From assembly GCF_001194135.2 (NCBI RefSeq), contig NC_068986.1, forward strand, positions 84,825,683 to 84,872,899: a stretch of 47,217 nucleotides of DNA, given 5' to 3'. Of the stretch, positions 277 to 45,725 are shown in pieces. A program made the translations under genes and the position numbers. The notes under the pieces were generated by a model that did not search any database, was not told the origin of the DNA, and saw nothing but the letters and a program-made list of their open reading frames with translations. The first letter of the stretch is position 1. The number at the start of each line of letters is the position of its first letter. The stretch is from Octopus bimaculoides. Lineage: Eukaryota.

Positions 277-531
277 CTTGGATGTTTGGAGATCCTCATA
301 TTCAAACTCTCGATGGCCTGAAATATTCCTTTAATGGTTTGGGTGAATATAGCTTACTAAGTGTACGTAATAAAACCTCAAACATAAATATGCTAGAAGT
401 TCAAACAAGGACCACTCAGGCGAAAAATGCAAATGGTACTCTGATCAACGCCACAATATTTTCGGCTTTTGCAATGAAAAACTTCATTACCAATACCTCT
501 GCACAGGTTGAACTAGCTTCTGATGAAAAGA
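277..531 (+). CDS. Mucin-like transmembrane protein (MUC4/SUSD2-like), window exon 1: start of vWD domain (AWMFGDPHIQTLDG...ASDEK)
   Basis: ttacag acceptor at 271-276 and A|gtaagt donor at 532; phase 1-1; FGDPHIQTLDGLKYSFNGLGEY is the typical vWD N-terminus of MUC4/SUSD2-type proteins. The gene continues upstream of the window. Confidence 0.93.
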
Positions 532-678
532 GTAAGTTTTGTTACTTTGTCAAACTTAATTTCATTTTACATGTTATAATGATGAAGTGTTGTAGTGAAT
601 AAAACCTGACGCTTTTGTTTAATGCTGGAATTTACATTTCATATTGAGTACAATTCTTCAATACCTATTACAGAGCTT

Positions 679-892
679 AAGGCGGTGATCTGACAGGATC
701 ATTAGCACTCCGGGCAAAAAGTTTATCGGCATTTCATTCGTCTTTACGTTCTGAGTTCCAATTCCTTCGAGATCGACTTTGATTTCCATCATTTTGGGGC
801 TGATAAAGTCAGTACCTGTTGGGCACTGGATTCAGTGTAATCGGCTTATCTGCACCTTCGAACTTGCTGGACTTGTGCCAAAATTAAAAACG
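679..892 (+). mobile_element. SINE family A (tRNA-like head, central gtcgactttgcctttcatcctttcggggtcgata core), diverged copy
   Basis: Alignable by eye to the better copies at 11226 and 41488. Confidence 0.75.
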
Positions 893-978
893 AATATCTG
901 TTACAGAGTTGTTTCTTTATTTCCAAATTGTCTAAGTGGTATTACTCCAAGTAAATTTTCTTTTGTTTTCTATTTCAG

Positions 979-1122
979 CTTTGGTTATCTACCACAATGG
1001 TATTGATAAAACATCTGACTTCCAAAAAGATTCTGACTATAGGCTGATTGACACCGACCTGTTTATTACCAGAAAGAATGACAACAAAACTGACCAGTCG
1101 GTGTCTCTAACATTCACATCTG
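979..1122 (+). CDS. Exon 2, vWD domain (TLVIYHNGIDK...VSLTFTS)
   Basis: tatttcag acceptor, G|gtaagc donor, 144 nt, phase 1-1, open and in frame with exons 1 and 3. Confidence 0.9.
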
Positions 1123-3086
1123 GTAAGCCAATTTACAGTAAATCTTAAATAAAATTGTTTTAGCCTCGATAGACTCTTGTTCGGGATATTGTGATATGAT
1201 AGAAATATTTTGTATTTTGATGCCTTCAGTGATCTGCTCTATGACGATAGTTACGTGCCGATATAACGTCCATTATTTATCACATATTACTATGCCCTTG
1301 CCAGCTAGGCTCATGTGTTACTTGGGAAATGCTAGATCACAAGCACTACAATAGATCTTAAACAAATAAGTTGTACAAGAGCCTATTTCCACGTGGTGAA
1401 ATCAACACCAAAAACATATATGTAATTTTCACGGGGACAAAACAGATAACTAGAGTTTATTTTCATGAACTTGCTTCACTTAAATCTCCCTATCCGTAGT
1501 TAGCAAATGTATTCCTTTCACAAACTTTTCGTTAATCCCTTCATAGTATGGAAATGGGATCTTGGAGCTAAAACTTTTTCCCCTTCGTTATGCTTCCAGT
1601 CAAGAGAACTGTCTTAGTGAATGCCTCTTCATGTGCTGTTCTGGCGTTTTGAGGAAAAATTTCGGCAGCAAAACTCATACTGCATTTTGTAATTTGCTGT
1701 ACTATACCCATGGATGGAGTATGTAGGACACTGGACTGAAATTACTGTAACATGAGCCAAAGAGCGTTTATATAAAAATTTGCCGGTTCAATCGCTTTGA
1801 TCATCTGTGGAATGAAGACTCTGAGTCTGCTGAGCCACAGTAAAAGATTTTCCGATTCCTAAGAACAGAGCAGCTTGACTACTCGCCACGTTGTGATCAC
1901 TCCTGCAACTATTATGTCTTCTGAATATGTTTAAACTGAATCCGTTGAATCTGTAGCATTATCAAATTATTCAAATACTAGTGAAGCTGACCCTTTGGAA
2001 TACATTGAGTTTGAAGAATGTTCAGGAACATCCATATATGCAGCAACATTCTTCCTAATAAATCGTCGAATAATATAATATATCTATCTTCAAAAGAAAA
2101 AATGGCAAAAATTATTCGAACACAGATCCTAGCTAGATTAAGAAACCTAACAGTGTTATTCTGTATCATAGAATAAATTGAGTAATATTGCAGTGAAGCT
2201 AAGCCCATGATTCAGATACAACATGAAGATATTGCAAAATATTTTGATCACGTAATAAAAATATTTGATTTTTTTTTTTTAATTAACACATGCCTATAAC
2301 ACCCGCAACTTCTAGCAATAGGTTATAACAGAAGTCATTTTATTATCTCCTTCAGCCGAATATGCTGATGACGTTGACAATATTGTCACGTATAACTACA
2401 TTTAGGGTACAAAATCACTCAAAATATATAACGGCGCAGAAAACGTGAATAAAATTTGAAGTGCATTTCTAACTCAAGTATTAGATGTCGATACCTAGTT
2501 GTATGTATAGCAAATATTCAAACAGAAATCTTGTTCGAAATTTCCATTTTTTTGCAATGGGGACCATCAGCCATACTCGGGCTTTCTCTTCTGGTACACT
2601 GCAAACTCTAAGAAAGAAATATAGGACGAATAAAAAGGTAAAAGCTGAAGCTTAGCATGAAGTAATATTTCTAACCACGTATTGAATGTCGACACGTGGT
2701 TCATTGCACAACGCTACAACTTTCAAAATAAAGCATGAATACAGAATTAATGGGATATAGAGGGTCACACTAAGATAAAAGATAAGGGAAGAAGGGCCAA
2801 AGTTACTGGAAAAGTCTAGTTTTGCCCTGGACGGATACAACGAGTACTTTTAGCTGGCTATAATAATTAAAACTGTGTTATTACGTCTATCTTCTAATTA
2901 GTTTTGAATGCAATCTAAGAAAACGATATAACAGTCATCAAACAAAAACAGAAAACTAATCAAATGTTTGAAAAATATTCTAAAACAAAATTTACTTGGC
3001 ATGGCTATGATACTTTCCGCTGTTAATTCTTTTCAGCATCATATTTCGAAGGTCCAAAAAGGTTATAATTATTCTTATCTTTCTAG

Positions 3087-3290
3087 GTGTTGATGTATCA
3101 GTGACGGTTGGTATTCGCATGCTTGCAGTAACCGTGAGTTTACCAGAAGGCTTTAAAAACACTACAGTAACCAGCGGTCTGATGGGAGTGTATAATGATA
3201 ACAAGACGGATGATCTCACAACACCAAATGGGACTGTTTTGCCTGAAAATTCTAGTGAAAGGGATATTTTTTATAACTTTGGTCAACATT
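3087..3290 (+). CDS. Exon 3, vWD domain (GVDVSVTV...SGLMGVYNDNKTDDLTTPNG...FGQH)
   Basis: ttctag acceptor, T|gtaagt donor, 204 nt, phase 1-1; GLMGxYNxxxxDDL..PNG and FGxxW are vWD motifs. Confidence 0.93.
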
Positions 3291-4399: not shown

Positions 4400-4639
4400 G
4401 GGCTATAAATACTTCTCTGTTTAAATATCAGAAGGGTTTTTCAAGTGCTGACTTTACCGACACTTCTTTTGTCCCCCTTTTTATTGATAAAAACTCGGAG
4501 ATTTACAAGAAAGCTTTACAGATATGTAAAGCAGACGATAACGCTTGCATTTATGACTACATCGCAACTGGTGATGAAAGTATTGCTAAAGCAACTGAAT
4601 CCCTTGATACGGAAGCTGAAGCTGACTTCCAAGCTGCAA
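4400..4639 (+). CDS. Exon 4, post-vWD region (WAINTSLF...CKADDNACIYDYIATGD...FQAA)
   Basis: tcttctcag acceptor, A|gtaagt donor, 240 nt, phase 1-1; C-x5-CxYDY..TG motif as in MUC4/SUSD2-type proteins. Confidence 0.92.
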
Positions 4640-6613: not shown

Positions 6614-6821
6614 GAAACACAGCCCCTGAAATTTCCGGTGAAGAAACTGTTAATATAATTATAAATCAAACAGCCACTGCCATTCTCAGTGTCACAGATG
6701 CTGAAAATGATACTATCACAGTCATAAAGCAACAAGGTGGCGAGTATTTTAATGTCAGTAAAAACGGATCCAATATTACATTATCAATATATTTGATGCA
6801 TTCAAATGCAGTTAATATCAG
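6614..6821 (+). CDS. Exon 5, cadherin/Ig-like beta module (RNTAPEISG...VTDAENDTITV...NAVNI)
   Basis: ttatcacag acceptor, AG|gtgagt donor, 208 nt, phase 1-2, open frame; not in the ORF track because it has no ATG. Confidence 0.88.
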
Positions 6822-8401: not shown

Positions 8402-10616
8402 TATACACGCTACAGATGAGACTACTGGAAAAGAAAAAATCCTAGCTTCGAGCTACAACAAGTAAACTTAGATGCTAAGGACCCTCCTAAATATCCTATC
8501 TGTCCCTAATAACACTGTTTTCTGCAGCTGTACTAAACTGGGTTTTATGCGTATTTCCTCAATCTATCTGTTCAAATCTTTTACGACAGTTCCTAATGCA
8601 CCTATAACTACTGGGATGCAGTTTACCCGCACTTTCCATAATCTCTGTAATTCAAAAGCTAGCTCCTCGTACTTTGTTATTTCTTTTATACGTTTCATAT
8701 TATTTTTTTCATCATTTGCGATTGTAAAGTTAATTATCTGGCACTTTCTGTTCTCGTTATCTAAATCAGGTCTTCTAGCTTCTATTACTATGTCAGTCTA
8801 AATGTTTAAGTCCCACAACATATTTTATTTCTTACATTCTAGTAATTTACTAGATTTATGTTCATACCATTTATAAGTATGTTCAAATCCTAGCTTTCTA
8901 CAAAGCTTCTAGTGGATTGCTTTCCCTAGATTATTATGTCTTTTCTTGTCTTCTTTGTGTGCCAGCATGCTACATTCACTTACTATATGAGTAACAGTTT
9001 CCGCTTTTGATTTGCATAATCTACATTGGAAGTCTACTTGGTTTTTGTCTATTTTGGCTTTTATCCAATTAGTCCTCAATACTTGATGTTGTGCAGCTTC
9101 TAACAATCTTTCTGTCTCCCTCTTCAGCTTTCTTTTCTGCAACCATATCCATGTCTCACTACTACTATTTGCTGCAACTATCTTTGGGAATCTACTATGT
9201 AACACCTTCTCCTGCTAGTCAGATAATTTCTGTTCTTTTTTCTAGTTTTTGAAGTTCGTTTGGTATTTTAGTTTCCCTATGTCTTGCTGTGGCTCTAGCA
9301 GCCTTTAATAAACTTTGTTCACTATATCTACTCTAGCTAAGTACACACAGTCTTCCACTGATATTAACCCGCTTCCACCTTCCTATCTAGGTAGGTTTAA
9401 ACTTTCTAATCCTGCCCTTTGGTGCATTGCTCCATTCATAGTGAATTCCTTCCTATTTCTTTTGTCCAGCTGCGCTAATTCTGTTTATGTCCAATCTACA
9501 AAAACTGTTGCGTATCTAAGTAATGATACTGTTCAAGGACTTACAGCCTTCACTAGATTCGGACCACATCGCTTTGACTTCATTAGGTTCCTCACCCTTC
9601 TGGTGTACTCCTTTTCAATTTTCGCTTTCATTTTTGTAGTTAGTACTTTGTCAGATACCTCTCTCCTTCTTTCAATGATTTTAATGTCTGGCCCTGTGGT
9701 AATTCACTGCCTTCGCTGTTGACTACCTGTTCTCTTCTCATGACTAATATTGCAGACTTATCTATGCCAAATTCCACGCCTATATCTTTGCTTAAGAGTC
9801 CTACAATCTGTTTTAAGGAATCTATCTCTATTTCATTCTTAGTAAAAAGCTTCAAATCATCCATGTAGAACAAGTGGTTAATTTTTCTATTATTATTTCT
9901 GAACTGATACCTTGTCTCCTTTTCCACAATTGCTCTGTTCTTTTTTTTTATCTTTTCCCGTCAGATACCTAATCTTCTGGTGACTACTATCCCCACTGCG
10001 TAGATCAATAAGTTAGTGTCTTTTATATTTTCAGTCCTCTTGTGTCTTTTATATTTTCAGTCTTCTTTCCAGTCTCTTCTACCTTCAATTATATCATCGA
10101 CTTTCTTCTAATGGCATTAGTTTGATCAACTATACACTGCTCAGTCACTTTAAAATACCTTTCTGTACCCAAAATGATAATATCTGTTTTCTGTAATCCC
10201 TTTCTTAGGTTCACTTCCTAAGTAGAACTGTATCATTATCCTGTTTTCTACGCTAGTCCACTTCCTCCTCTTTGCTCTATTATCTGCTGATGCTCTATTA
10301 GGATGACATCTGTGGTCAGTCTGATTCTTTACTGTTCCATTGCCGAGAGAGTGGCCTTCCCTTAAAGGTCCAGATTCATTTTCGCTGTTACAACCAGAGT
10401 TTTTCCGAAACTCTTGTCGCTCATACACTGAGGTAAGGTAAAGTTCGTCAACATCGTCATCATCATTATTGTTTCTCGACATCTGAACATTTCTAATAAC
10501 ATTTTATTGCATCATCTGTTACACCCTTGTGTTGCGTGATGCGTTAAGCATTTTTTGGGAGGGGGGGATATTGTATCAGTACGTTTTGTTATAGGGTCTT
10601 GTTAGAGGTATGTATT
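8399..10616 (-). mobile_element. RLE-type (R4/Dong-like) non-LTR retrotransposon, internally deleted pseudogene copy
   Basis: Minus-strand pieces in order: N-terminal RRKWTSVENRIM, RT motif INHLFYMDDLKLF, CCHC knuckle CRLCKSKAETVTHIVSEC, C-terminal QKTVLLGT; several frameshifts. Confidence 0.85.
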
Positions 10617-10740: not shown

Positions 10741-11988
10741 TATGTTTGATTTTACTTTGTATTTGTACGAGTTGACTCCAGGTCTCCCCCAGAGACCTCA
10801 ATAGACAACAACTTAGAAGCTCGCGTTCATGTTATGCCTAGGGTGCCATATCTTTGGTTGTCAACATAGTATTGTTTTAGAGAATGTTTAGGAAAATATA
10901 AGTAAATTGTAAGTTTGTTTTAAAATTCGAGATTACATAGACAGTATTTTACGCAAGATATGGGCAGTCCTCATGAACACTATCTTTTGAATTTCTGCCA
11001 TTTGGGGGTTTCCTGATATCTGAGCTAGGTAGCAATCAGCCTTTTTGCTATAATTCCTAGGGCACCTATGACAACAGGTATGGTTTTAGTCTTGAGGTTC
11101 CACATTTTGCCAATTTCTATTTCAAGATCTTTATACTTGCTCAGTTTTTGGTAGGTCTTGGAACAGTAATATCAATGAAGAGGCATGATTTTTGCCTGAA
11201 CTTTTTCAATATAATGTATGGCCTAAGGCGGCGAGCTGGCAGAATCGTTAAGCACGCCGGGCGAAATGCTTAGCGGTATTTCGTCTGCCGTTACGTTCTG
11301 AGTTCAAATTCCGCCGAGGTCGACTTTGCCTTTCATCCTTTCGGGGTCGATAAATTAAGTACCAGTTACGCACTGGGGTCGATGTAATCGACTTAATCCG
11401 TTCGTCTGTTCTTGTTTGTTCCCTCTATGTTTAGCCCCTTGTAGGCAATAACGAAATAGGTATTTTGTCTGCTGTTACGTTCTGAGTTCAAATTCCACCG
11501 AGGTCGACTTTGCCTTTCATCATTTCAGGGTCGATAAATTAAGTACTAGTTGCGTACTAGGTGCGATTTAATTTCTAGCCTTGTGCCTAGAGTAGAAAAG
11601 AACACAATGTCTGGCCTATTCGCGTCTATCTTTCTGTCAGTTTGAACGGTGGAGTTCCAGAGGAATGAGATGTGTTCATTTTCAAGCACTGTAGGTGGCT
11701 TGTGTTCCCACCAGCTTTTATCATGGGGCAGGTTCAGATTTTTGCAAATTACTCAGTGCTGCTCTATCATTCCTGTTGAGATACTCTGTAGGCGCAAGAA
11801 GACTGCACATGGAGACATGTCAAATGGTTTCATTTTGTTGTTTACATTCACGACATGTTGGGCTATGCCGTTCTTTGATATTTTGGCTTGGTAGGTCCTT
11901 GTAGGTAGGCATTGATCTTGGGCTGCTATGATAACCCTTCTGTTTCTGATTTTAAACCAGAAGATACTAACCATTGAAGAGTAAGTGC
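10741..11988 (-). mobile_element. 5'-truncated RLE-type non-LTR retrotransposon interrupted by a SINE
   Basis: Minus translations IIAAQDQCLPTRTYQAKI, CHS-knuckle region, DANRPDIIL (RLE PD motif), YQKLSKYKDLEIEI; (TAA)n-type tracts at both ends. Confidence 0.82.
11226..11600 (+). mobile_element. SINE A dimer/nested pair with about 13-bp target-site duplication
   Basis: aatgtatggccta (11213-11225) versus aatgtctggccta (11606-11618); second monomer restarts at ggtattttgtctgc. Confidence 0.88.
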
Positions 11989-13748: not shown

Positions 13749-13913
13749 GTGATAACTGTGAAAAAGACTTTGATGGATGCAGCGGTAATCCTTGCCCTGG
13801 GATAGGAAAATGTACAGACTTACATCCAGACGAACACAGAGCCCAAAATACATCTTTCCGGTGTAATTGTCCACAGGGTTACGTTTTGAACAATGCAACA
13901 TTCCGTTGTCTAG
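13749..13913 (+). CDS. Exon 7, EGF-like (GDNCEKDFDGCSGNPC...FRCNCPQGY...FRCL)
   Basis: atcaacag acceptor, G|gtaaca donor, 165 nt, phase 1-1; EGF cysteine spacing. Confidence 0.9.
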
Positions 13914-17074: not shown

Positions 17075-17191
17075 ATGAAGATGAATGTCTAAGTAATAAA
17101 TCCTGTGAACACAAGTGTATAAATACCGACGGCGGTTTCAAATGTTCGTGCAACCCTGGTTATCAAATTGTTAATAATGTGAAATGTGAAA
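17075..17191 (+). CDS. Exon 8, calcium-binding EGF (DEDECLSNKSCEHKCINTDGGFKCSCNPGY...CE)
   Basis: tcag acceptor, A|gtaagt donor, 117 nt, phase 1-1; cbEGF consensus. Confidence 0.93.
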
Positions 17192-20426: not shown

Positions 20427-20558
20427 ATATCAATGAATGCAGACTCAACACTCATACATGCAAACAATTGTGTAACGATACAAATGGTAGTTACAAGTGC
20501 AGTTGTTACGAAGGATATATAATACAAAGCAATGGCAGCTGTACAAAGAATATTTCAA
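20427..20558 (+). CDS. Exon 9, calcium-binding EGF plus short extension (NINECRLNTHTCKQLCNDTNGSYKCSC...KNIS)
   Basis: tttcag acceptor, A|gtaaga donor, 132 nt, phase 1-1. Confidence 0.92.
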
Positions 20559-22775: not shown

Positions 22776-22892
22776 GTAACTCTATTTGTTTTAACGAATG
22801 CAATGGAACTGATGGATGTAATGTGGTGAACGGAAAACCTGAGTGTTTTTGTAATATCGGTTACAATTTAACAAATAATTCCTCTTGTGTTG
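22776..22892 (+). CDS. Exon 10, EGF-like (SNSICFNECNGTDGCNVVNGKPECFCNIGY...CV)
   Basis: tgcag acceptor, G|gtaagt donor, 117 nt, phase 1-1. Confidence 0.9.
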
Positions 22893-23158: not shown

Positions 23159-23272
23159 ATATCGATGAATGTCAGAAGGATCCCTGTGAAGGTACATGTA
23201 GGAACCTTAATGGCACATTTGAATGTAGCTGTCCTCCCGGGAAAAAGGTGTTCCAATCAACTAAATGTGTTG
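23159..23272 (+). CDS. Exon 11, calcium-binding EGF (DIDECQKDPCEGTCRNLNGTFECSCPPG...CV)
   Basis: tttag acceptor, G|gtaagt donor, 114 nt, phase 1-1. Confidence 0.93.
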
Positions 23273-23699: not shown

Positions 23700-23954
23700 A
23701 TTGTGATGAAAATCATTTTGGTGAGAAATGCGAAGGAGATTGTAACATGTGTAACGAGAAATCAACTGAAAGATGTGATAAAGTAAGTGGATGTATCTGC
23801 AATGAAGGTTGGAAAAATAAAACATGTGAAACTGATATTGACGAATGTCAAAATGCAAGTGTCTGCTCTGCAAATGAAATTTGTGGAAACCAGAATGGAA
23901 CTTACGAATGCAAATGCCAATCAGGGTACAAAAAGGAAGAAAATACGTGCGTAG
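23700..23954 (+). CDS. Exon 12, laminin/MEGF-type EGF plus calcium-binding EGF (DCDENHFGEKC...DIDECQNASVC...NTCV)
   Basis: ggtag acceptor, G|gttggt donor, 255 nt, phase 1-1; matches ORF 23624-23971. Confidence 0.92.
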
Positions 23955-26562: not shown

Positions 26563-26694
26563 ATGTAGACGAATGTGCAAACGATGTTGATGACTGCGAA
26601 CATACATGTGTAAACACGGACGGCTCATTTCAATGCGAATGCTACACTGGTTACAAGCTGGATACAGACCGCAAGAAATGCATCAAAACGAAAG
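26563..26694 (+). CDS. Exon 14, calcium-binding EGF plus extension ([31 protein letters not shown]...CIKTK)
   Basis: ttcag acceptor, G|gtacta donor, 132 nt, phase 1-1. Confidence 0.92.
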
Positions 26695-31245: not shown

Positions 31246-31365
31246 TTATCAATACATGCGAGAATCTGAACTGCTCCTACGCCTGTGATATAAACAATGG
31301 AACAGCTTCCTGTCAATGCCAGAAGTTTTATAAACTTGATCCCGCGACAAACACTACATGCATAA
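31246..31365 (+). CDS. Exon 15, EGF-like (VINTCENLNCSYACDINNGTASCQCQKFY...TTCI)
   Basis: ttatag acceptor, A|gtaagt donor, 120 nt, phase 1-1. Confidence 0.9.
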
Positions 31366-32062: not shown

Positions 32063-32260
32063 ATCTTAATATACTTATCACATTAAAAATACAATTTGCA
32101 TAACTGAAACGACTATAATCCATTGTATTGCGAATGGTAAGTGTATCAAATATTTATGTGTAACTTAATAGATGACCAACAAGAAAGCTTTACACAATAT
32201 GGTGTATCATCTGCAGTATTCTTAACACCGTACTTTATTCATTATTCTCTTTGTTTTCAG

Positions 32261-32334
32261 TTTTCTCCTACGATGTTGTCATCAGAATCTATATGCCTTT
32301 CACAGCTAATCTAAATGAGACACTACGTCAAACG
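32261..32334 (+). CDS. Exon 16, probable first part of SEA domain (IFSYDVVIRIYMPFTANLNETLRQT)
   Basis: Strong pyrimidine tract ending ttgttttcag, ACG|gtgagt donor, 74 nt, phase 1-0; beta-strand then helix-like sequence fits an SEA N-terminus. Confidence 0.72.
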
Positions 32335-34030
32335 GTGAGTTTATTCTCTGCTTTTTAGTGTTACATGCACAGAGAGATATTATATCAACTTTTATATACA
32401 TTATTCTTCACCTGGTCGTTACCATACACGTTTAATACCATCTAACCCACAGAAGCTGATTTTAGTTTCATCAGAAAAAAGAATTTTATTCCAAAACTAC
32501 TGCCCCTTACTCACCGACCAGTAGCTTTGTACATTTGAATTACTTTGACAACTGTAAAACACGCTGTTGGATCCTAAACTATTCTTGTGCAAATTAAAAA
32601 AAAAATTTCTTCAAATTTTCATACAATTCTTTTCCTTTGGTGCCATTTTAATCACAATAAAGGTACATAAATCAAAATTTCTGCAGATACATTAACAACG
32701 ACTGGCGTAAAAATGTCAGGAGAAATTATTCATGAGAATTGAAATTATCAGCAATATCTGAATTTAGTAAAAAGAAAGTGAATAAAATATTGAATATAGC
32801 AAATTTCCTTTAGGTTGTACATATTTCTGTAACGTTTGAAAATTAATATTTCGTGCATACCTTTGAAATTGTTCATTGTTTTGTGTTCCAAACTTGTATA
32901 ATGCTTGCATGTATAATATATCTTATACAGAATAAATTTCGTTTAATTTCCTCTGGTTTTAACATAGTAATGGCAATTTTACGGAAATTTTTAGGGGTGT
33001 ACATACTTCTGTGAGATACNNNNNNNNNNNNNNNNNNNNNNNNNNNNNNNNNNNNNNNNNNNNNNNNNNNNNNNNNNNNNNNNNNNNNNNNNNNNNNNNN
33101 NNNNNNNNNNNNNNNNNNNATGCATATATACATACATATACCCATACATGTGTATATACATACACATATATAATGTGATATGAAAAATAAAATATCATGT
33201 ATATATGAAGATATATAATGCGCGTTCGGTTGAGTTTTGTTTGCTTGTTGGTAGATTAAGAAGAAATATAATTAGTCCACCGAGAGATAAGTATTATTAA
33301 ATTAGTTCCGGAATTATCTCTCAGCTACCCAGCTACGTCTAGTTTCAAGCTCACTCAGTGAATTAATTGGGTTGGCTTGATATCATATCGTGCCTGAGCT
33401 AGAAATCATCCACATTCAAATGTGGATGATTTTCTGAAAATGTTTGACAAATTGCATGGGGGAGGGGGCCATGAAAACATGATGGAGAACAGAATGAATG
33501 ATTAAGCCCTTTAACCTGTTCGTTGATAAGTAGTCAAATGTATATTTCTAAATGAAAATTCATTTGTTTGTATATACACTGACCAGTAAATTAATTTTGT
33601 TCCTCTTTGAACAATTTACTTGTTAATGCATTGTAAATGTTATGTAATGCATTAAACATATCCTGCAATTGTCCATTGATATTAGTATTAATTCGCAAGA
33701 CCTTCCCGGTTTTGAAGTTCTGTCTTAGAAATGTTTGATTGAGACTACGACAATATAAAAACTTTTCTTGCATTCGTTGAAATCTCTGGAGTTTCAAAAT
33801 CGAAAGTGTTATGTAAAACTTCCAACTTCTATTCTTAGTCTTACTTCTGATTTCATCATTCGCCATCACCGTATATATTTACGGTATTGCCTTTCCTAAG
33901 CACATATTTATCTCTGTAATATCCACCACCACTAATGCAACAGTTTAATAAACTTAACATTCTTTGGGTTTTAAATATCCTTTCGAAACAAATTTCTCTG
34001 AAACTAACTTTAATAAAATTTATGTTTCAG

Positions 34031-34182: not shown

Positions 34183-35539
34183 GTAAGTATGTTCCACAAA
34201 ATTTTAGTAATTTAACTTTGTGATATACTGTGAGAATACAGTCATGCTTCACCTGAATACAGTCATGCTTCACCAGAGTATACATACTATTCAGATTCTT
34301 CCGCATATGATTTAAAAAGAAACGTCTTTAATGCTATTTCATTTTGTCCGTTTTATTTGCAACAATTTCGACATAATTGATGCCACTTATATATGGAGAT
34401 GTATGGACAGGTATATAAACTGAATTTATGTCAAATACTGTAAAATATCATACATAGCGCTTGAAGAATATGTATGTTGGGTATGTGAGGGAAAATATTA
34501 ATGGGGGCACAAATAGGTGTTTAAATACTATAGAAACAACCTACGTGTAACTCATTGACAACTGCATTTTTTATAAATGTTGGCTAATGTATACACTGTA
34601 GATTATGAGGTATCTATGTAAGATATTTTATGAAGTAAAAAAAGATTATTGTGTGCAGTTTAGTAGACAGTAAATAGCTACGCGTTTCCAGAAAAGAAGG
34701 GGATAATATCACTTGCAAATAAACAAATAGACTCTATAATGAAAGGAAAAACAAGATAAACACGAGCATGCTGCAAGAAGAAAGAGTAGAATTATCAAAA
34801 CTACAAACACATTCAATCAGTTAAAAGCATATTTCTCCTGTAAACGTTTTTCAATTCATTGAATACGCATCATCCTTTTACTTAAACATCTCATTTCGAA
34901 GTTGAGCTAAATATCTTTAAAAAACTGCTCAGTCAGTAATAAACAATTCTACCGTTTGAAAAATAAATGTAAGATTTTTCTCTTCAATATTTCTTCATAG
35001 CCAATAATTGTTTAACCTTTAAATTCATGAAAACATTTGCTATCGAAAATAAAAGAATAATACTCTGAAACTTACCATTTACTAATTTATGTATGAGGAA
35101 ATGTTATTGAAATATAAAACAAAATCATTTGATATTTACCATCTGAGATAAATATTGCTAATACATATTTACAAGTATGAGCTGTTGTATATTGTTTGTT
35201 GGTCTGTTATCTTGGGGCCAACTCTTTAAAAGTAGTCAAAACCCACATTATAATGATAAAGCAAATGCTTGATAAGGAACAATATTTATGGCGGAGTATT
35301 TTTACATAAATAACTATTGATGGCGTCGCTGGGCAATTAAAGAACGTAAAAAATCATACATACATACATACATACATACACACATACATATATTCATACA
35401 TCGTTATATAGACACACATAGACTCACGCATACACACACACACACACATACAAATACATACACACATCTACACTTTTTATTAGAGGATTAATAGGATGAA
35501 GCTAACCTTGCCTAACGGAATTCCAACTGCGATTCATTG

Positions 35540-37244: not shown

Positions 37245-37268
37245 ATAGTACAACTCCAACAGAAGAAG
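37245..37268 (+). CDS. Exon 18, 24-nt microexon, Thr-rich stalk (NSTTPTEE)
   Basis: tttttttccag acceptor, AAG|gtaaat donor, phase 1-1, in frame between exons 17 and 19. Confidence 0.72.
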
Positions 37269-38930: not shown

Positions 38931-39063
38931 ATTCTACAGATTTAATTCTCGGTCTTGGCATTGGAATTTCTGCAGCAGTTATTTTACTGGTCATAATTCT
39001 GCTTTGCATTTGGTTTAAATGGAAAAAGAAAAATACTGAATGTCTTCTGAACACATCAGATAT
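38931..39063 (+). CDS. Exon 19, transmembrane helix and stop-transfer (DSTDLILGLGIGISAAVILLVIILLCIWFKWKKK...)
   Basis: ttccatgcag acceptor, AT|gtaaga donor, 133 nt, phase 1-2; long hydrophobic run followed by KWKKK. Confidence 0.92.
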
Positions 39064-40394
39064 GTAAGATGACCAATACTTCTTTGTCTTTCCTCTATGT
39101 TAGAAAATATGTGTAAACAATGAAATCTTATTTAACGTTAATGTCATGCTAGCTATACAGTATGTCTTGAACTAGTAATGCTTCTGTCGGTAATAACAAA
39201 TTAAAAATGTCAGCCACGCTTTTGCAGTACCTGTAATTTATTGCTCACTGTTTTTCTATATCAGTAGAATCTCAATTTGCCTAAGCATGCGGTTAATAAT
39301 CGATACTTAACACATATGGCACGCAATGACGCAGAAATCTTCACTTAGCAATTTCACTGCCACTTGAGGGCGCTTTTCGTCTGCTACTAAAACATTTCTG
39401 TGCTTTTAATCAGTGGTATGCACTCCCGAGATGAATACTGTAATTGAGTAGTAATCTACTGTATATCCACGTTAAATAAGAGTATTACTTTGAATTAATA
39501 TATTCCTCGTTGCCAGTGATTTGCGACAGCAGTGATTTTTTAATCACTATTTTTCAATATATACAGAGGCTGATATAATAACTTTTCTGACAGCGCAGTT
39601 AGGACATTTATCAGTCAAACAAGTGGCGTCGAACTTGACTCACATGTCTAGTTTGGCTTTCACTGATGTCCAGGATTTCCTTGCGAATATTGCCGCTTAT
39701 ACCTGTCAATACCCTATATAGGATGCTAGTGTTGACAATCCAGCGATCATGTTTACTATAATTCCTAATTTAAGCAAAAGAACCACTTATCGTTTTAAGA
39801 TGTTATAATAGCTCATGTAGCGGCTGCAATAACTGAATAGAAGTCATTTTATATTTCATGGTTTGATGAAAAGCGGATTCTATCTGATTTCCTTTGGTTT
39901 GTTGTAATTTTAGTTATATCCCAAAATAAATAAATATATATATATATATATATCGGTTGAGTAAAAGTTAAACAATGTCTTGAACATTGAAGTATGTGTA
40001 CTGGAATCTTGCACGGTTTTGAATTTCTTCAGACAAATTTTTTGCAATTGTCTGATAATACAGACATAGACTTGCTCAAATGCATCAATAGATTAACGTC
40101 GACTCTTTTTCGCCGTTGTTACTATCATCTGAAATTGATCGGTTGGTTTGGACGTCTTTTGGTAATTATTCCGATTTCTGTTCGATTTATTACCGATTTG
40201 TTGAACTTTCATTCTGTTTGTTTTGAAATACACTCTATTTCTCTGCCTTTTGGCAGATTTGTTAACGGTTTCCCCATTGGGGGAAATGTTTCCCTTCTTT
40301 GAAAAAAATTTTTCTTCATCATGTTCAACATAAACTCATGAGATGTGTCTTCATCGGACGAAGATTTGAATGAACAAGATCACGATTTAAGCGA

Positions 40395-41377
40395 GGAATT
40401 GCGAATTAAAAAAATTGCAGTAAAATTTGTGCCCCTTTTGCACACGGAAGATCAAAAGCAGTCACGACTGAATGCGTGTCATTAACTGAAAGAACAGTTG
40501 GAAGTTAATCCAAACCGTTTATCAAAGGTTATTACTGGTGACGAAAGCTGGTGCTACAGTTACGATCTGGAAACGAAGCAGCAATCAAGTCAATGAAAGC
40601 TGTCGATGTCACCACACCCTTAAAAAGTGTATCAGATGAAGACCAATGTCAAGACAATGCTGATTTGTTTCATCGATGTGAAAGGAATTGTCCACACAGA
40701 ATTTGTTCCCCCCGGTGAAACTGTTAACCAGACAGTTTACTTGGCAGTTCTGAAGCGTTTGCAAGACACAGCGAGACGAAGACATTCTGACCAGTGGCAG
40801 AGTGGAACGTATTGGTGTCATCACCACAATGCACCTGCACACAACTCCTTGCGCATGTGGCAGTTTTTGACCAAAACTTACATAACCCAGCTTACCCACC
40901 CTCCCTCCCTATCNNNNNNNNNNNNNNNNNNNNNNNNNNNNNNNNNNNNNNNNNNNNNNNNNNNNNNNNNNNNNNNNNNNNNNNNNNNNNNNNNNNNNNN
41001 NNNNNNNNNNNNNNNNNNNNNNNNNNNNNNNNNNNNNNNNNNNNNNNNNNNNNNNNNNNNNNNNNNNNNNNNNNNNNNNNNNNNNNNNNNNNNNCAATCT
41101 TGCTCCATGAGACATTTTTCTGTTCCACCAAATGAAAATAAGTCTTTAAAGTAAGACGTTTGCAGATGGAGAAGAGGTGTATAAGAAAAACGATGGAGGC
41201 GTTAAAAGGCATCACTTTGCAAGAGTCCCACGTCTGGCTCGAACAGTGCAAAAAGCGTCTGGACCGTAGCATGGCTTGAAATGGCAAATACTATGAAAGT
41301 GGTGAAAATATAAACATGTAAAACTAATTCAATGAGATAATACTGCAAAATTCCGGTTTCTTTCAGGTAGCCCCTCG
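40395..41377 (+). mobile_element. Mariner transposon remnant with right TIR ending cccctcg|TA
   Basis: KFVP...ITGDESWCYSYDLETKQQSSQ*, MLICFIDVKGIVHTEFVPPGETVNQTVY, HHHNAPAH, HPP; gap over the SPDLAP region; TIR-like end 41345-41377. Confidence 0.88.
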
Positions 41378-41487
41378 TATATAAATTATGACATCTAATA
41401 GCTAAAGAATAAAATATAAATATGGAAACACTATGCCATCGTCAGTTTAAATACTAAACTGGCTTTTTCTTAGTATATAATATGTCT

Positions 41488-41894
41488 AAGGTGGCGAGCT
41501 GTCAGAAACGTTAGCGCACCGAGCGAAATGCTTAGCGGTATTTCGTCTGCCGTTACGTTCTAAGTTCAAATTCCGCCGAGGTCGACTTTGCATTTCATCC
41601 TTTCGGGGTCGATAAATTAAGTTCCAGTTACGCACTGGGGTCGATGTAATCGACTTAATCCCTTTCGCTGTCTTTGTTTGTCCCGTCTATGTTTAGCCCG
41701 TTGTGGGCAATAAAGAAATAAGAAACGTTAGCCCGTCGGGCAAAATTCTGAACCGTATTTCGTCCGTCTTTACGTCTTTACGTTCTGAGTTCAAATTTCA
41801 CCGAGGTCGACTTTGCTTTTCATTCTTTCGGGGTCGATCTAATCGACTGACCCTCTCCCGCAAAATTTCGGGCTTTGTGACTAGAGTAGAAAAG
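41488..41894 (+). mobile_element. SINE A dimer/nested pair with perfect 16-bp target-site duplication
   Basis: agtatataatatgtct at 41472-41487 and 41895-41910. Confidence 0.92.
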
Positions 41895-42109
41895 AGTATA
41901 TAATATGTCTTCTTAATGCTCTTTTGTCTGTGATCATGTATTGTAATCTTTATATCAGTTCGCTTGGAATTCAAACTGTTATGGGTTATCTTTATATAAT
42001 TGTGTTCGTATAGATTTCGCATGCATGGAATGTTACAATCGAACGAATATGAATCGATTTGTATGTTATACTTTTTTTCTATATGTTTAAATGCTTGAGT
42101 GGAGATGCC

Positions 42110-42290
42110 TGGATTAATGGCTAGAGTGTTGGATTCATGAGCGTAAAACAATGGTTTCGATTCCTGGAAAGGGCGTTGTGTTCTTGAATACAAACACTTC
42201 ATTTCACGTTGCTCCAGTCCATTCAACTGGTAAATATAATTTTGCGACGACCCGGTATTCCGTCCAGTGGAAGATATATACAGCATGGAA
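42110..42290 (+). mobile_element. SINE C, sense, diverged
   Basis: tRNA-like head (ggtttcgattcctgg), gcgttgtgttcttga...catttcacgttgctccagtccattcaactgg. Confidence 0.65.
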
Positions 42291-42591
42291 ACCAGGAAAC
42301 CGACCCTCGGGAAGGAACTTCACTTTCTTTTTAGAAATACACAATTGAAACAATCATTTGTCTAATATGATGTAAGCGTTTAGTAAATATGTAATATTCT
42401 CCAAACGTTGTTATGTAGTCTGTATTACTTGGAATTCTTCGAAGCGATCTTTCGGGGCAATTACCCTGGATGTTAATCTTCATAGGATCGATTGCTTTCT
42501 GGTAGTTTGATGTAGTCAACCAAGTTTACTTACACACTGAGTCCATACTAGCTATCTGTTTTGGTTTATTAATCCCTACAACTACTTACAC

Positions 42592-42667
<76 letters not shown>

Positions 42668-42669
<2 letters not shown>

Positions 42670-43180
42670 TTGCACTCCGTCGCTTACAACGACGAGGGTT
42701 CCAATAGATACGATCAACGGAACAACTTACTCGTGAGATTGACGTGCAAGTGACTGAGTACTCCACAAACACGCGTATCCCTTCATATACTTCTCAGGGA
42801 GATTCAGTAGGACACAGTGTGGCAAGGTTGGCCCATTGAAATACGAGTACTACCCATTTTTGCCAGCTGAGTAGACTAGAGCACCTTGACCGTTGACTGA
42901 ACACTATTCAATTTTTTTTCTCCGTGTTTTTCTCCTTGTCTCCGTATTCTTTCTGTTGAAGAGCGTAGCTCGAAACGTCAAAGACTTTCCGTATTCCCGA
43001 GCGTCATACTAATACATCCTTTTGTTATTTACACCACCTGTCCTCGTCTGTTGTTATTATTTGTATATTCTCCCACATAAAATAAAGTATCTTGTTCAAG
43101 GACACAACGCGCCGCCGGGAATCGAACTTGCGACCCTACAATCACGAGCCGAATACCCTAACCACTAAGCCACGTGCCTT
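42668..43180 (-). mobile_element. SINE C, antisense, interrupted by an about 190-bp insertion (42883-43074)
   Basis: Head cttgttcaaggacacaacgcgccgccgggaatcgaac...taaccactaagccacgtgcctt and body gccagctgagtagactagagca are separated by foreign sequence. Confidence 0.8.
42948..42984 (+). ncRNA. Minimal type I hammerhead ribozyme fold with variant core (CUGUUGA), inside a Penelope-like terminal-repeat fragment
   Basis: Stem I TCTTT/AAAGA; core CTGTTGA+A; stem II GAGC-gta-GCTC; GAAAC; palindromic ACGT helix III; cleavage triplet GUC (42977-42979). Invariant A6 is U in this copy. Confidence 0.6.
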
Positions 43181-43188
43181 GACTATAA

Positions 43189-43263
<75 letters not shown>

Positions 43264-43324
43264 TCCCTGATGGAGATTTAATATTTAAATGTATTTACGT
43301 TAATCAATATTTTGTATTTCACAG

Positions 43325-43428
43325 TTTACAAGTAGATAACACTTATATGGATAACGCCCCAGGCTGGAAGAAGGAGAATATCGGCATAAACAAAGATTTC
43401 GATTGGCACGAGGGACCTCAACAGAAAT
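43325..43428 (+). CDS. Exon 20, cytoplasmic tail (ILQVDNTYMDNAPGWKKENIGINKDFDWHEGPQQK)
   Basis: tatttcacag acceptor, T|gtaagt donor, 104 nt, phase 2-1 matching exon 19. Confidence 0.82.
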
Positions 43429-43854
43429 GTAAGTCTATTTTCCCGCAAATAAATATCCTTATTGCAATATGTTTCCCAGTTTTGATGACTTTATTAAATT
43501 CTTTTCCAAGACTGTGTGCTGACAGATTCGTTAGCACACCGAACAAAATGCTTGACAGCAGTTTTTCCACATTCTGAGTTCATATTTTGACCAGGTCGAG
43601 TTTATCTTTTTATAATTTCAGAGTCTTTAAAATAAGTAACAGTGAAATATCGAGGTCAAGTAGACTTATAGTCACAAAGTTTCCATCCCTCGTTTACTTT
43701 TCTGGCATAAAATACCTTCAAACATTTTGTCTAATGTATATCTTTTTATGTAACGTAATATAGCATTGATGTTGCCACCGTCTCTAGCTGGTCGGATGAT
43801 AACGCCAATTAAATGCCTGATTCATGAAATTGTTTGTTGTTGGAATTTTTATCG

Positions 43855-44232
43855 CTTACTTGTTTCGGTCATTAGGCTGCGGCCATAGTGGGGGTACCAT
43901 CTTGAAGAGTTTTACTCCAACTGATTGGCCCCCGCACTTATTTTTCAGTCTGGTACATATTTCGTCTTACTTTTTGCTGAGCTCCTAAGTTAGTGGGACA
44001 TAAACAAATCAGAACCGGTTACCAAGACTGGGGAGTGAACAATTACCGACACAAAGATGCATACACGCACACACATATATGTACGGCGGGCTTCCAGTCG
44101 TTCCATCTACCAAATTCATTCATACAGCATTGGCCATTCTGGGGTTATTCTATAAAAAACACGAAAGGTGCCACGCTGTGGGATAGAACTTGAATCTATG
44201 TGGTTTCAAAACGAGCTTCTTAACAACTCATC
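43855..44232 (-). mobile_element. SINE B, antisense, diverged full copy
   Basis: Reverse complement of SINE B head (ttccatctaccaaattcatt...ggtgccacgctgtggga...gaacttgaatctatgtggtt) and tail. Confidence 0.72.
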
Positions 44233-44659
44233 AATTCCTGCAACTATAATGTTTATTTTATGGTTATTTTCGATCAAGGAGTAATATTTGACCAAAGCCA
44301 TTCCAGGTTATGCCTTCATTTTTCTTCTGCATGCATTCTGTAGATAGAACTAAAAATTCAAAATATTCAATGTCCTTTCCCTTTTTATATGACAGCACAT
44401 GATGCGATGCAAATTTTAATACTATTTCTAGGATATCATGTGTACATGGAGGTTCCACCATTTTCTCGTTCGTAGATAGAAATGAATGACATTTTGTGAA
44501 TACAATATTTCACCAAGTCACACTTAGAAAAAAATTAAAAACATTTTGGGACACCGAGAAATTGATTGAACAGTTTATAATCTTGGGAAAGAAAAACTCT
44601 TGAGAAACTTTGGAAAGAAAAGTCCTTCGTTCAGTTTGCTAGATCGTATAAGTAAAGGT

Positions 44660-45180
44660 ATCTGTTTACTTTAAGGCTTCAGTTATACTGACACTGGCTC
44701 GCGACCTCTCGAGCTATCAATACATTCTGATCGGCTCTGATAGAGCAGCTCAATGTTTTGAAGTGTTCTTCTTGAGACCAAACATGTTTTCTAATGAAGA
44801 AAACCGTCCACAATATATCGCATGTCTTCAATGCTGCTGACCACGAAAGCTGAGTCATTTGCGTGTAGCAACGCCCTAACTCAAATCTCCCAGATATCGG
44901 TGAAGGCACGAAGACTAGCTTCGCATCTCTTCTGGGGTGGATAACGATCCCCTTCTGCAAATAGACCAGCCTTCACGGTGTCTAGCACAACTGAGAGTTA
45001 AAGTGCGACGAGCGAAAGGGCAGGCATAAAGCTCTGCTTCACACCATGGTTGACCGTAAACGCTTAACTAAGTACTCCATCAAATAAGACTGGCCCTTTT
45101 ATTACTGCATGGAACTCCTTGATAATGTGAACAAGCTTTTCGGGACATCCATAAGTCTCTAGCACTTTCAAAAGGTATTT
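44660..45180 (-). mobile_element. RTE-clade LINE reverse transcriptase fragment, degraded
   Basis: Minus translation AFTVNHGVKQS...ALLHANDSAFVVSSIEDMRYIVDGF resembles the RTE GVKQG...LLFADD...EDLQ motifs. Confidence 0.65.
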
Positions 45181-45690
45181 GTTAGTTCAAATGCCTGGAA
45201 AAAGTCCACAAACACCATGAAAAGTGACCAGTGTTGCGCCGCTGCTTCTTCCTATAGCTGTTGCAGTGAGAAGATCATGCCTGTGGTTGCTCTCCATATA
45301 TACATAGGCAGATAGATACATAGATAGATGGAAATACAGAAGGGAAAATAAATGTAGACATATAGCTGGATAGATATATAAGTGTGAATATATGGGTGTG
45401 TTTATATATGTGTGCATGTGTGTATGTGTGTGGGAGTGTGTGTGTGTGTGCGGATGCATGTGTGAATGGGCGTGTATGTGCGCGAGTGTGTGTGAATGTA
45501 TGGGTGTTGGTGAGTGTGCGACTATGTGTATACGCGTCTGCAAGTGTGTGTTCTTATGGCCTTCAAATACATTTTGCTCGCAACAGAATTGTACACTTTA
45601 TCAATTAATAAATGTATCAATCTCTTATATCCGTTTTTCTTAACTCCTATCACTTAAGTTTATTGCTTAATATTTTATATCTCTTTGCAG

Positions 45691-45725
45691 CGTATTTTGA
45701 CTATGTCCTCGAAAGTGAAGACCAA
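45691..45725 (+). CDS. Exon 21, cytoplasmic tail (SYFDYVLESEDQ); gene continues beyond window
   Basis: ctctttgcag acceptor, CAA|gtgagt donor, 35 nt, phase 1-0 matching exon 20; no stop codon reached. Confidence 0.75.

What the first reader, a model, noticed from the sequence alone, without database searches (positions are those of the whole stretch)
277..45725. Hybrid membrane mucin-like receptor carrying both autoproteolytic modules (MUC4-type GDPH vWD and MUC1-type SEA GSIIV)
Seen: one spliced frame runs vWD(GDPH) - beta module - about 11 EGF - SEA(NGSIIVD) - stalk - TM - tail. Established: in vertebrates MUC4 is cleaved at GD|PH and has no SEA, while MUC1/3/12/13/17 are cleaved at G|S[VI]VV in SEA and have no vWD. 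Inference: this protein could be cut twice into a distal NIDO/AMOP-side subunit, a middle vWD-EGF subunit and a membrane stub. That would give a two-stage sheddable or mechanosensing epithelial coat receptor, possibly an ancestral or lineage-specific union of the two mucin classes.
Basis: partly seen in the sequence, partly recalled or inferred. Interest (0 to 1): 0.75.

Follow-up and report, generated by a model that had tools for sequence, protein, structure and literature searches.

The report
Octopus MUC4-like receptor with SEA-like domain
This is a real, expressed octopus gene for a MUC4-family membrane glycoprotein that also carries a divergent SEA-like domain next to the membrane; the combination is uncommon but has already been described in sea anemones, and neither predicted self-cleavage has been tested.

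Summary
I rebuilt 21 in-window exons (277-45725, + strand). All have AG/GT borders and consistent phases. They encode GDPH-vWD, C8-3_MUC4, a beta module, about 11 EGF-like modules, a SEA-like domain, an 8-residue stalk, a TM helix and a tail.

RNA contigs from the same species confirm the joints E6>E7>E8 and E14 through E20. One correction matters: the middle exon of the SEA-like domain (62 nt) is missing from the assembly, most likely in the N gap at 33020-33119. Without it the frame breaks. I recovered it from RNA.

The vWD/MUC4 assignment is solid (Pfam VWD 48 bits, C8-3_MUC4 43 bits). The SEA assignment fails Pfam's own test, with no PF01390 hit. It is supported by remote homology:
- a homologue scores 21.8 bits on Pfam SEA;
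- the family profile finds the ADGRF1 SEA region and SEA-annotated proteins;
- an AlphaFold model of a homologue is beta-alpha-beta-beta-alpha-beta with G-S in the beta2-beta3 hairpin.

Both cleavages are inferred from motifs only. The architecture (MUC4-like plus a C-terminal SEA) was published for sea anemones in 2022, so this is a new member of a known kind. The O. vulgaris orthologous locus lacks the SEA exons.

The parts
277..531 (+). Exon 1: start of the vWD domain, xWMFGDPHIQTLDG; GDPH codons at 288-299
   Evidence: Acceptor tttacag|CT at 276/277; Pfam VWD 48.4 bits, E 1.6e-12; GDPH conserved in O. vulgaris, Mytilus and Pinctada homologues
979..1122 (+). Exon 2: vWD
   Evidence: AG/GT, phase 1-1; collinear with P0001; 92% nt identity to L001
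3087..3290 (+). Exon 3: vWD C-terminal part
4400..4639 (+). Exon 4: C8-3_MUC4 domain
   Evidence: Pfam PF23263, 43 bits, E 2.6e-11
6614..6821 (+). Exon 5: beta-rich module with no Pfam family
   Evidence: AG/GT, phase 1-2; collinear with P0001, P0002 and P0003
7680..7843 (+). Exon 6: end of the beta module plus the first EGF-like Cys motif
   Evidence: Its 3' end is joined to exon 7 in RNA contigs
13749..13913 (+). Exon 7: EGF-like module
   Evidence: RNA contigs show E6>E7 and E7>E8
17075..17191 (+). Exon 8: calcium-binding EGF
   Evidence: The RNA loose end behind 13913 equals the exon 8 start; Pfam EGF_CA/cEGF
20427..20558 (+). Exon 9: calcium-binding EGF
   Evidence: AG/GT, phase 1-1; orthologous exon in L001; joints not tested by RNA
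22776..22892 (+). Exon 10: EGF-like
   Evidence: joints not tested by RNA
23159..23272 (+). Exon 11: calcium-binding EGF
23700..23954 (+). Exon 12: two EGF-like modules
   Evidence: present in P0001 and P0006
25751..25861 (+). Exon 13: calcium-binding EGF
26563..26694 (+). Exon 14: calcium-binding EGF
   Evidence: Its 3' end is the loose end before exon 15 in an RNA contig
31246..31365 (+). Exon 15: last EGF-like module
   Evidence: RNA joint 31365>32261, GT..AG, in 4 runs
32261..32334 (+). Exon 16: SEA-like beta1 and the start of alpha1 (FSYDVVIRIYMPFTANLNETLRQT)
   Evidence: RNA joints on both sides
33020..33119 (.). Assembly gap that most likely hides the 62-nt middle exon of the SEA-like domain (LLEKYRQILSNVEDVIIHSI)
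   Evidence: RNA contigs carry 58 unplaced letters between 32334 and 34027; the sequence was read from loose ends; it restores the frame; paralogue P0005 has the same segment
34031..34182 (+). Exon 17: SEA-like beta3-alpha2-beta4; RNG|SIIVD, with the GSIIV codons at 34035-34049
   Evidence: 100% identical to database protein P0004
37245..37268 (+). Exon 18: 24-nt stalk, NSTTPTEE (short Thr/Pro-rich linker)
   Evidence: RNA joints E17>37245 and 37268>38931
38931..39063 (+). Exon 19: TM helix (LILGLGIGISAAVILLVIILLCIWF) followed by KWKKK stop-transfer residues
   Evidence: RNA joints; the homologous segment is modelled as a helix in P0007
43325..43428 (+). Exon 20: cytoplasmic tail
   Evidence: The RNA loose end behind 39063 equals the start at 43325; P0004 and P0001
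45691..45725 (+). Exon 21: cytoplasmic tail (SYFDYVLESEDQ); the final exon lies beyond the window

Best explanation
The window holds most of a cephalopod gene, probably from Octopus bimaculoides, for a type I membrane glycoprotein of the MUC4/SUSD2 family.

Reading outward-in, the encoded protein is:
- (NIDO and AMOP upstream of the window);
- a vWD domain that opens with GDPH;
- a C8-3_MUC4 domain;
- a beta-rich module;
- about 11 EGF-like modules, several of them calcium-binding;
- a divergent SEA domain whose beta2-beta3 hairpin reads R-N-G-S-I-I-V-D;
- an 8-residue Thr/Pro stalk;
- one TM helix;
- a tail of about 70 residues.

Shown: the exon structure, its expression, the joints E6>E7>E8 and E14 through E20, the vWD/C8-3/EGF identities, and that the SEA-like module belongs to a conserved cephalopod family.

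Inferred. During biosynthesis the chain would cut itself twice. One cut is at Asp-Pro of GDPH, as in MUC4, SUSD2, RGM and FCGBP. The other is at Gly-Ser of GSIIV, by the strain-driven N-to-O acyl shift known from MUC1-type SEA domains. In both cases the fragments would stay non-covalently associated within their folded domains. That would give a three-chain cell-surface complex whose outer parts could be pulled off by force.

The SEA module is a three-exon cassette (74+62+152 = 288 nt) with phase 1 on both sides. It can therefore be gained, lost or skipped without breaking the frame.
For: Gene model: AG/GT borders and consistent phases.

RNA joints:
- E6>E7>E8.
- E14>E15>E16 and E16>62 nt>E17.
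- E17>E18>E19>E20.
- Contig depths are similar along the gene in each run.

Domains and homologues:
- VWD 48.4 bits and C8-3_MUC4 43 bits; EGF_CA 110 bits.
- Homologues are named mucin-4-like or MUC4 in O. vulgaris and Mytilus, and the Mytilus one carries NIDO+VWD.
- AMOP-like and NIDO-like exons lie within 9 kb upstream of exon 1 in the orthologous O. vulgaris locus.

SEA:
- Family members P0005 (O. bimaculoides), P0006 (O. vulgaris), P0008 (Argonauta), P0012 and P0007 keep R-x-G-S-V/I-V/I-V invariant.
- P0007 hits Pfam SEA at E 2e-4.
- The family profile hits the ADGRF1 SEA region at E 0.008 (that residues 181-224 fall in the SEA domain is from my memory of the UniProt annotation, not a tool result).
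- It also hits four PF01390-annotated proteins among its eight best non-family hits.
- hhalign gives 96% probability.
- The AlphaFold model of P0007 is beta-alpha-beta-beta-alpha-beta with G-S at the beta2/beta3 turn, pLDDT 73-91.
- SEA structures (TMPRSS6; 2e7v, which has the highest identity at 20%) are among the Foldseek hits.

Background on GDPH cleavage: PMC10880436.
Against: - Pfam SEA gives no hit on the window's own protein, even with the recovered exon and at E<=10.
- phmmer against PDB finds no SEA chain.
- The P0007 SEA score (21.8 bits) is below Pfam's gathering score (26.4).
- Foldseek does not separate SEA from other ferredoxin-like folds; all E-values are about 1e-3 to 1e-2.
- The hhalign test is not independent, because A3 was chosen by score against A2. 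The word prefilter also favours proteins that share GSV(I/V)V.
- The structure model is of a 28%-identical homologue, not of the window protein.
- No single RNA record spans vWD to SEA. E8 through E12 joints were not seen directly.
- Cleavage at either site is untested. Many SEA domains with imperfect context are not cleaved.
- The O. vulgaris orthologous locus lacks the SEA exons.
Confidence: 0.72

Rival explanations
1. The architecture is right, but the juxtamembrane module is only a SEA-shaped spacer that is not autoproteolytic, or the GDPH is also uncleaved. The mature protein would then be one or two chains, and there would be no two-stage shedding.
For: - No Pfam SEA hit.
- Foldseek is non-discriminating.
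- Established knowledge (from memory): several SEA domains, such as most MUC16 repeats and agrin, are not cleaved, and cleavage depends on hairpin strain, not on the motif alone.
- GDPH cleavage mainly stabilises the vWD fold rather than releasing fragments (PMC10880436).
Against: - G, S and the following beta-branched residues are invariant across all family members found, including the 28%-identical P0007. That is the conservation pattern expected of a functional site.
- The G-S pair sits at the beta2/beta3 turn in the model.
- GDPH is conserved from octopus to bivalves.
Confidence: 0.3
2. The SEA exons do not belong to this gene. On this view a draft-assembly error or a near-identical paralogue put them between the EGF exons and the TM exon, and the true gene resembles its O. 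vulgaris ortholog (EGF, then short PTS exons, then TM) without SEA.
For: - The long-read O. vulgaris orthologous locus aligns with the window on both sides (to 32060 and from 34293) but has nothing matching 32060-34293. It has no SEA-like exon by blastn or tblastn.
- The window has an N gap exactly there.
- RNA shows a second upstream exon (...TTEKTTAAQ) joined to exon 16 and a second variant of exon 18. Neither is in the window.
- Paralogues with SEA-like modules exist.
Against: - RNA contigs join exon 15 to exon 16, and exon 17 to exons 18 and 19, with zero mismatches to the window on both sides of each joint.
- Depth is comparable with the rest of the gene.
- The cassette is phase-compatible with its neighbours.
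- Database protein P0004 runs from exon 17 to the tail at 100% identity.
Confidence: 0.07
3. The domain reading is right, but the function is not that of a mucin. On this view the protein is an adhesion, junction or matrix receptor in the manner of SUSD2 or Drosophila Mesh, or of EGF-rich matrix receptors, rather than a sheddable glycocalyx or mechanosensing coat protein.
For: - The 1021 residues encoded here contain no long Pro/Thr/Ser repeat. There is only an 8-residue stalk, plus 43 N-glycosylation sequons and 72 Cys.
- Eleven EGF modules, several calcium-binding, are typical of interaction scaffolds.
- SUSD2 and Mesh share NIDO-AMOP-vWD without being mucins (from memory).
Against: - PTS-like exons are seen joined to the SEA cassette in RNA and in the O. 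vulgaris locus.
- The N-terminal part of the gene, where MUC4 carries its mucin domain, lies outside the window and was not examined.
Confidence: 0.3

Closest known systems
Vertebrate MUC4 (rat sialomucin complex ASGP-1/ASGP-2)
   Same: Both have a vWD domain opening with GDPH, a C8-3_MUC4 domain, EGF-like modules, a single TM helix and a short tail. NIDO-like and AMOP-like exons lie upstream in the orthologous locus.
   Different: The octopus protein has about 11 EGF modules instead of 2 to 3, and an extra SEA-like domain next to the membrane. No PTS repeat domain is seen in the part encoded by the window.
Sea-anemone mucin4-like proteins with a C-terminal SEA (Actinia tenebrosa and others; PMC9080433)
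   Same: The same domain-level union: NIDO-AMOP-VWD plus a SEA domain before the TM.
   Different: They are cnidarian rather than molluscan, and were described from transcriptome Pfam annotation only. Their SEA passes Pfam whereas the octopus one does not. Their EGF content and cleavage motifs were not compared here.
SEA-type membrane mucins MUC3/12/13/17 and MUC1
   Same: A juxtamembrane SEA with G|S[VI]VV in the beta2-beta3 hairpin, EGF modules adjacent to the SEA, and a PTS linker (established knowledge; the motif and position were tested).
   Different: They have no NIDO/AMOP/vWD. The octopus SEA is too divergent for Pfam PF01390.
SUSD2 / Drosophila Mesh
   Same: NIDO-AMOP-vWD(GDPH) type I membrane proteins that are not classical mucins (from memory; SUSD2 GDPH cleavage is discussed in PMC10880436).
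   Different: They carry a Sushi domain instead of an EGF array, and no SEA.

Membership tests
MUC4/SUSD2-type NIDO-AMOP-vWD proteins | vWD domain recognised by the family model | tested here: met
   Pfam PF00094 at 48.4 bits (cut-off 22.9), residues 2-182 of the model. It was not listed when the whole 825-residue draft was scanned.
MUC4/SUSD2-type NIDO-AMOP-vWD proteins | GDPH autocleavage motif at the start of the vWD domain | tested here: met
   WMFGDPHIQTLDG at 288-299. It is conserved in P0006, P0002 and the Pinctada locus. Cleavage itself is not testable here.
MUC4/SUSD2-type NIDO-AMOP-vWD proteins | MUC4-type C8-3 domain after the vWD | tested here: met
   PF23263 at 43.1 bits (cut-off 25)
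MUC4/SUSD2-type NIDO-AMOP-vWD proteins | NIDO and AMOP domains N-terminal to the vWD | tested here: inconclusive
   They lie outside the window, which has only 276 nt upstream of exon 1. In the orthologous O. vulgaris locus, tblastn with the Mytilus MUC4 N-terminus finds AMOP-like exons (E 1e-4 and 8e-4) and a NIDO-like exon (E 0.14) within 9 kb upstream. Mytilus P0002 has Pfam NIDO.
Mucins in the strict sense | Long Pro/Thr/Ser-rich, O-glycosylated repeat domain | tested here: not met
   Within the window there is only the 8-residue NSTTPTEE stalk. PTS-like exons exist in RNA and in the O. vulgaris locus. The N-terminal part of the gene was not available.
SEA domain (Pfam PF01390 / SEA superfamily) | Match to the family HMM at or above its curated threshold | tested here: not met
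   No PF01390 hit on the window protein with or without the recovered exon, at E<=10. Homologue P0007 scores 21.8 bits against a cut-off of 26.4.
SEA domain (Pfam PF01390 / SEA superfamily) | Detectable remote homology to recognised SEA domains | tested here: met
   The family profile A2 hits ADGRF1 residues 181-224 (E 0.008); that these residues fall in its SEA domain is from my memory of the UniProt annotation, not a tool result. A2 also hits PF01390-annotated proteins P0013, P0014, P0017 and P0019. hhalign gives 96% probability, but that test is not independent.
SEA domain (Pfam PF01390 / SEA superfamily) | Beta-alpha-beta-beta-alpha-beta fold with the G-S site in the beta2-beta3 hairpin | tested here: met
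   Met in the AlphaFold model of homologue P0007: E13-21, H29-47, E53-62, E66-74, H79-91, E102-110, with G64-S65 at the turn and pLDDT 73-91. The window protein itself could not be folded. Foldseek is consistent but not specific.
SEA domain (Pfam PF01390 / SEA superfamily) | G|S[VI][VI]V cleavage motif, with actual autoproteolysis | not testable with these tools
   The motif RNGSIIVD is present, and G and S are invariant in the family. Cleavage needs an experiment.
Calcium-binding EGF arrays | EGF_CA/cEGF HMM matches | tested here: met
   EGF_CA at 110 bits in 6 stretches; cEGF at 105.8 bits in 7 stretches

The most novel reading that the evidence does not exclude
The octopus gene may be a bilaterian survivor of an ancestral MUC4-type protein that still had a juxtamembrane SEA domain, as proposed by Zaretsky and Wreschner and seen in sea anemones. 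If so, vertebrate MUC4 lost the SEA secondarily. The SEA module would persist in cephalopods as a frame-neutral three-exon cassette that is still being gained, lost or alternatively joined: it is present here, absent from the O. vulgaris ortholog, and joined to at least two upstream and two downstream exons in RNA.
Probability: 0.3. Interest if true: 0.55.

Novelty: new member of a known kind. Interest (0 to 1): 0.38.

Why it matters
It gives a molluscan, RNA-supported example of a protein that unites the two classes of membrane-mucin self-cleaving modules. That bears on how MUC4 and the SEA mucins are related. It would also provide a natural test case for whether two non-covalent 'break points' in one receptor act in sequence under force. 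In practical terms, the gene is split and truncated in current annotation because one exon is lost in an assembly gap. It also shows that a cephalopod SEA family escapes Pfam's model.

Tried and rejected
The tool does not print the letters between a joint's two sides, so I read the missing exon from loose ends in two further calls (33, 34).
- My first guess at the stalk exon, taken from a mixed loose-end consensus, matched nothing in the window. The real exon 18 came from joints.
- Pfam SEA on the window protein gave no hit. phmmer against PDB gave only chance-level hits.
I used P0004 and homologues instead.
- The PDB profile search was topped by spurious summed hits to designed PPR repeats, which I rejected as repeat artefacts.
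- Foldseek did not discriminate SEA from other ferredoxin-like folds.
- The locus of paralogue P0006 could not be fetched. Its gene range is 163 kb, so that gene model may be a fusion, and I gave it little weight as evidence for the architecture.
- The Pinctada locus showed GDPH-vWD and EGF exons but no SEA-like or TM exon within 10 kb downstream. This neither supports nor refutes conservation in bivalves.
- The minus-strand GDPH at about 6199 is chance, next to a TG microsatellite and a gap.

Full report
WHAT THE WINDOW IS

The window is AT-rich (about 34% GC), full of microsatellites, and has 13 N gaps. Its coding parts are 85% identical in protein to an Octopus vulgaris 'mucin-4-like' protein, P0001. 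They are 80-93% identical in DNA, introns included, to that gene's locus L001. A 160-residue database protein, P0004, matches the 3' exons at 100% identity. A paralogue, P0005, is annotated in O. bimaculoides. The source is therefore an octopus, probably O. bimaculoides; that last step is inference.

CHECKING THE OBSERVATION

As bare motifs they are at chance level, since a second GDPH occurs on the minus strand beside a microsatellite. The evidence is the gene around them.

From stop-free segments, splice-site consensus and phase bookkeeping I built 21 in-window exons on the + strand, from 277 to 45725. All have AG/GT borders, and most introns are phase 1, as is usual for EGF exons.

RNA contigs of four runs from the same organism show these joints:
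- E6>E7 and E7>E8.
- E14>E15, and 31365>32261 (E15>E16).
- E16>unplaced letters>E17.
- E17>37245, 37268>38931 and 39063>43325, that is E17>E18>E19>E20.

Contig depths are similar along the gene within each run.

THE GAPS

All gaps named by the scan program lie in introns of this model. RNA joints span three of the gap-bearing introns (E6/E7, E7/E8, E14/E15), and the O. vulgaris protein spans a fourth (E4/E5). The joints E8>E9 and E9>E10 were not tested.

One gap that the program did not list, 33020-33119, matters. E16 ends in phase 0 and E17 begins in phase 2, so joining them directly breaks the frame. The RNA contigs carry 58 letters between 32334 and 34027 that are not in the assembly.

I laid the contigs on each flank separately and read the loose ends. 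This gives a 62-nt exon that encodes LLEKYRQILSNVEDVIIHSI and completes the Arg before NGSIIVD. With it, the frame runs through 1021 residues. The O. bimaculoides paralogue P0005 has the equivalent segment, MLFEEYRKNMGNVLDVIINEIRNGSVIVD.

DOMAIN IDENTITIES

The N-terminal 405 residues hit Pfam VWD (48.4 bits) and C8-3_MUC4 (43.1 bits). The EGF array hits EGF_CA (110 bits) and cEGF (105.8 bits). Counting cysteine patterns gives about 11 EGF-like modules.

GDPH is conserved in the O. vulgaris, Mytilus and Pinctada relatives. NIDO and AMOP would lie upstream of the window. In the orthologous O. vulgaris locus, tblastn finds AMOP-like and NIDO-like exons within 9 kb upstream of exon 1. Membership of the MUC4/SUSD2 family is well supported. 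'Mucin' in the strict sense is not, because the window encodes no long PTS domain.

IS THE JUXTAMEMBRANE MODULE A SEA DOMAIN?

Pfam SEA does not hit the window protein, even with the recovered exon, and phmmer against PDB finds nothing. The tools would not accept the reconstructed sequence, so I went through homologues.

1. An exhaustive HMMER search with P0004 found a small family. It comprises P0005 (O. bimaculoides), P0006 (O. vulgaris mucin-4-like), P0008 (Argonauta), P0012, and a more distant P0007 (E 4.8e-13).
2. In their alignment R, G, S and a following V are invariant.
3. P0007 hits Pfam SEA at E 2e-4, 21.8 bits, just under the 26.4-bit cut-off.
4. A profile of the family hits residues 181-224 of ADGRF1, E 0.008, as the best non-repeat match in PDB. 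That these residues lie in the ADGRF1 SEA domain is from my memory of the annotation, not a tool result.
5. In the large protein database, four of the profile's eight best non-family hits are PF01390-annotated proteins with the same FRNGSVI(V/A)D core.
6. hhalign between the two sets gives 96% probability. That test is not independent, because the second set was chosen by the first profile.
7. An AlphaFold model of P0007 gives beta-alpha-beta-beta-alpha-beta with G64-S65 at the beta2/beta3 turn, pLDDT 73-91.
8. Foldseek returns ferredoxin-like folds in general. These include the SEA-bearing TMPRSS6 and the mouse SEA structure 2e7v, but without discrimination.

Together these make a divergent SEA domain the most likely reading (about 0.8). 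It rests on transitive evidence.

MECHANISM

Shown: the architecture and its expression.

Inferred from established knowledge of the families. GDPH in vWD domains is cut between Asp and Pro early in the secretory pathway, and the fragments stay together (MUC4, SUSD2, RGM, FCGBP; PMC10880436). SEA domains with G|SVVV are cut by a strain-driven N-to-O acyl shift, and the two halves stay associated through the shared beta-sheet until pulled apart (from memory).

Applied here, this predicts a three-chain complex. The chains would be the NIDO/AMOP side ending in ...FGD, a middle chain running from PH... through vWD, C8-3 and the EGF array to the SEA N-half ending in RNG, and a membrane stub made of SIIVD..., the stalk, the TM helix and the tail. 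Nothing here tests cleavage.

UNEXPECTED FINDINGS

The SEA cassette (74+62+152 = 288 nt) is phase 1 on both sides, so it can be inserted, deleted or skipped in frame.

The O. vulgaris orthologous locus aligns with the window up to 32060 and again from 34293, but has no SEA-like exon by blastn or tblastn. Instead it holds about 12.7 kb with ORFs I read as retroelement-derived (not checked against a family model), PTS-like exons and a 5.27-kb tandem duplication.

In RNA, exon 16 is also joined, at similar depth, to an exon ending ...TTEKTTAAQ. Exon 17 is also joined to a variant of exon 18. Neither is in the window. The locus is therefore more complex than this draft assembly shows.

A misassembly explanation for the SEA exons is unlikely, because the RNA joints match the window exactly on both sides.

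COMPARISON WITH WHAT IS KNOWN, AND NOVELTY

However, sea-anemone mucin4-like proteins with NIDO-AMOP-VWD plus a C-terminal SEA were described in 2022. They were discussed there as support for a SEA-bearing MUC4 ancestor (PMC9080433). My searches found no equivalent description for molluscs. The octopus proteins are annotated only as 'mucin-4-like' or 'uncharacterized'.

I rate this a new member of a known kind, with moderate interest.

Noticed in passing
window 33020-33119 (N gap): A 62-nt coding exon present in RNA contigs is missing from the assembly. Current gene models are split here: database protein P0004 starts exactly at exon 17.
   Followed up: yes
window 32259-32261 (acceptor of exon 16): RNA contigs join exon 16 to a second upstream exon, at a depth similar to the E15 joint. 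That exon ends ...AACCACAGAAAAAACCACGGCAGCACAAG (TTEKTTAAQ, PTS-like) and is found nowhere in the window.
   Followed up: partly
window 34182 (donor of exon 17) and 37245-37268: A second, Thr-richer variant of the 24-nt stalk exon is joined to exon 17 in RNA, at equal or higher depth than the assembled exon 18. It could be an allele, an unassembled duplicate or a paralogue.
   Followed up: partly
L001 38205-50918 and 50918-61641 (O. vulgaris ortholog): The orthologous locus lacks the SEA cassette. It carries long ORFs at 41291-44379 that look retroelement-derived (my reading of the translations, not scanned against a family model), PTS-like exons (for example 45827-46045) and a 5.27-kb tandem duplication containing exon-18-like exons.
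   Followed up: partly
window 8912-9960, minus strand (intron 6): A decayed retroelement, with sub-threshold Pfam hits to RVT_1 (18.4 bits, with a YMDD motif) and zf-RVT (21.3 bits).
   Followed up: partly
window 11251-11424 and 41489-41686 (minus strand); similar pieces near 16604-16791 and 24011-24148: A short interspersed repeat whose translation reads ...RPRKDE(R/M)QSRPRRNLN(S/L)ERNGRRNTAKHFAR... It recurs in several introns and also in the O. vulgaris locus.
   Followed up: no
window 34068 and 13787: Expressed single-base variants: A>T at 34068 (Thr to Ser in the SEA-like domain) in runs X1 and X4, and A>G at 13787 in X1, X3 and X4.
   Followed up: no
window 40342-40715 (+) and 46422-46948 (-): ORF fragments that look like transposase remnants (for example ...KFVPKLHSADPKDTRVSVAQDLL...) lie in the last introns and downstream. 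They have no Pfam hit at E<=0.01.
   Followed up: partly
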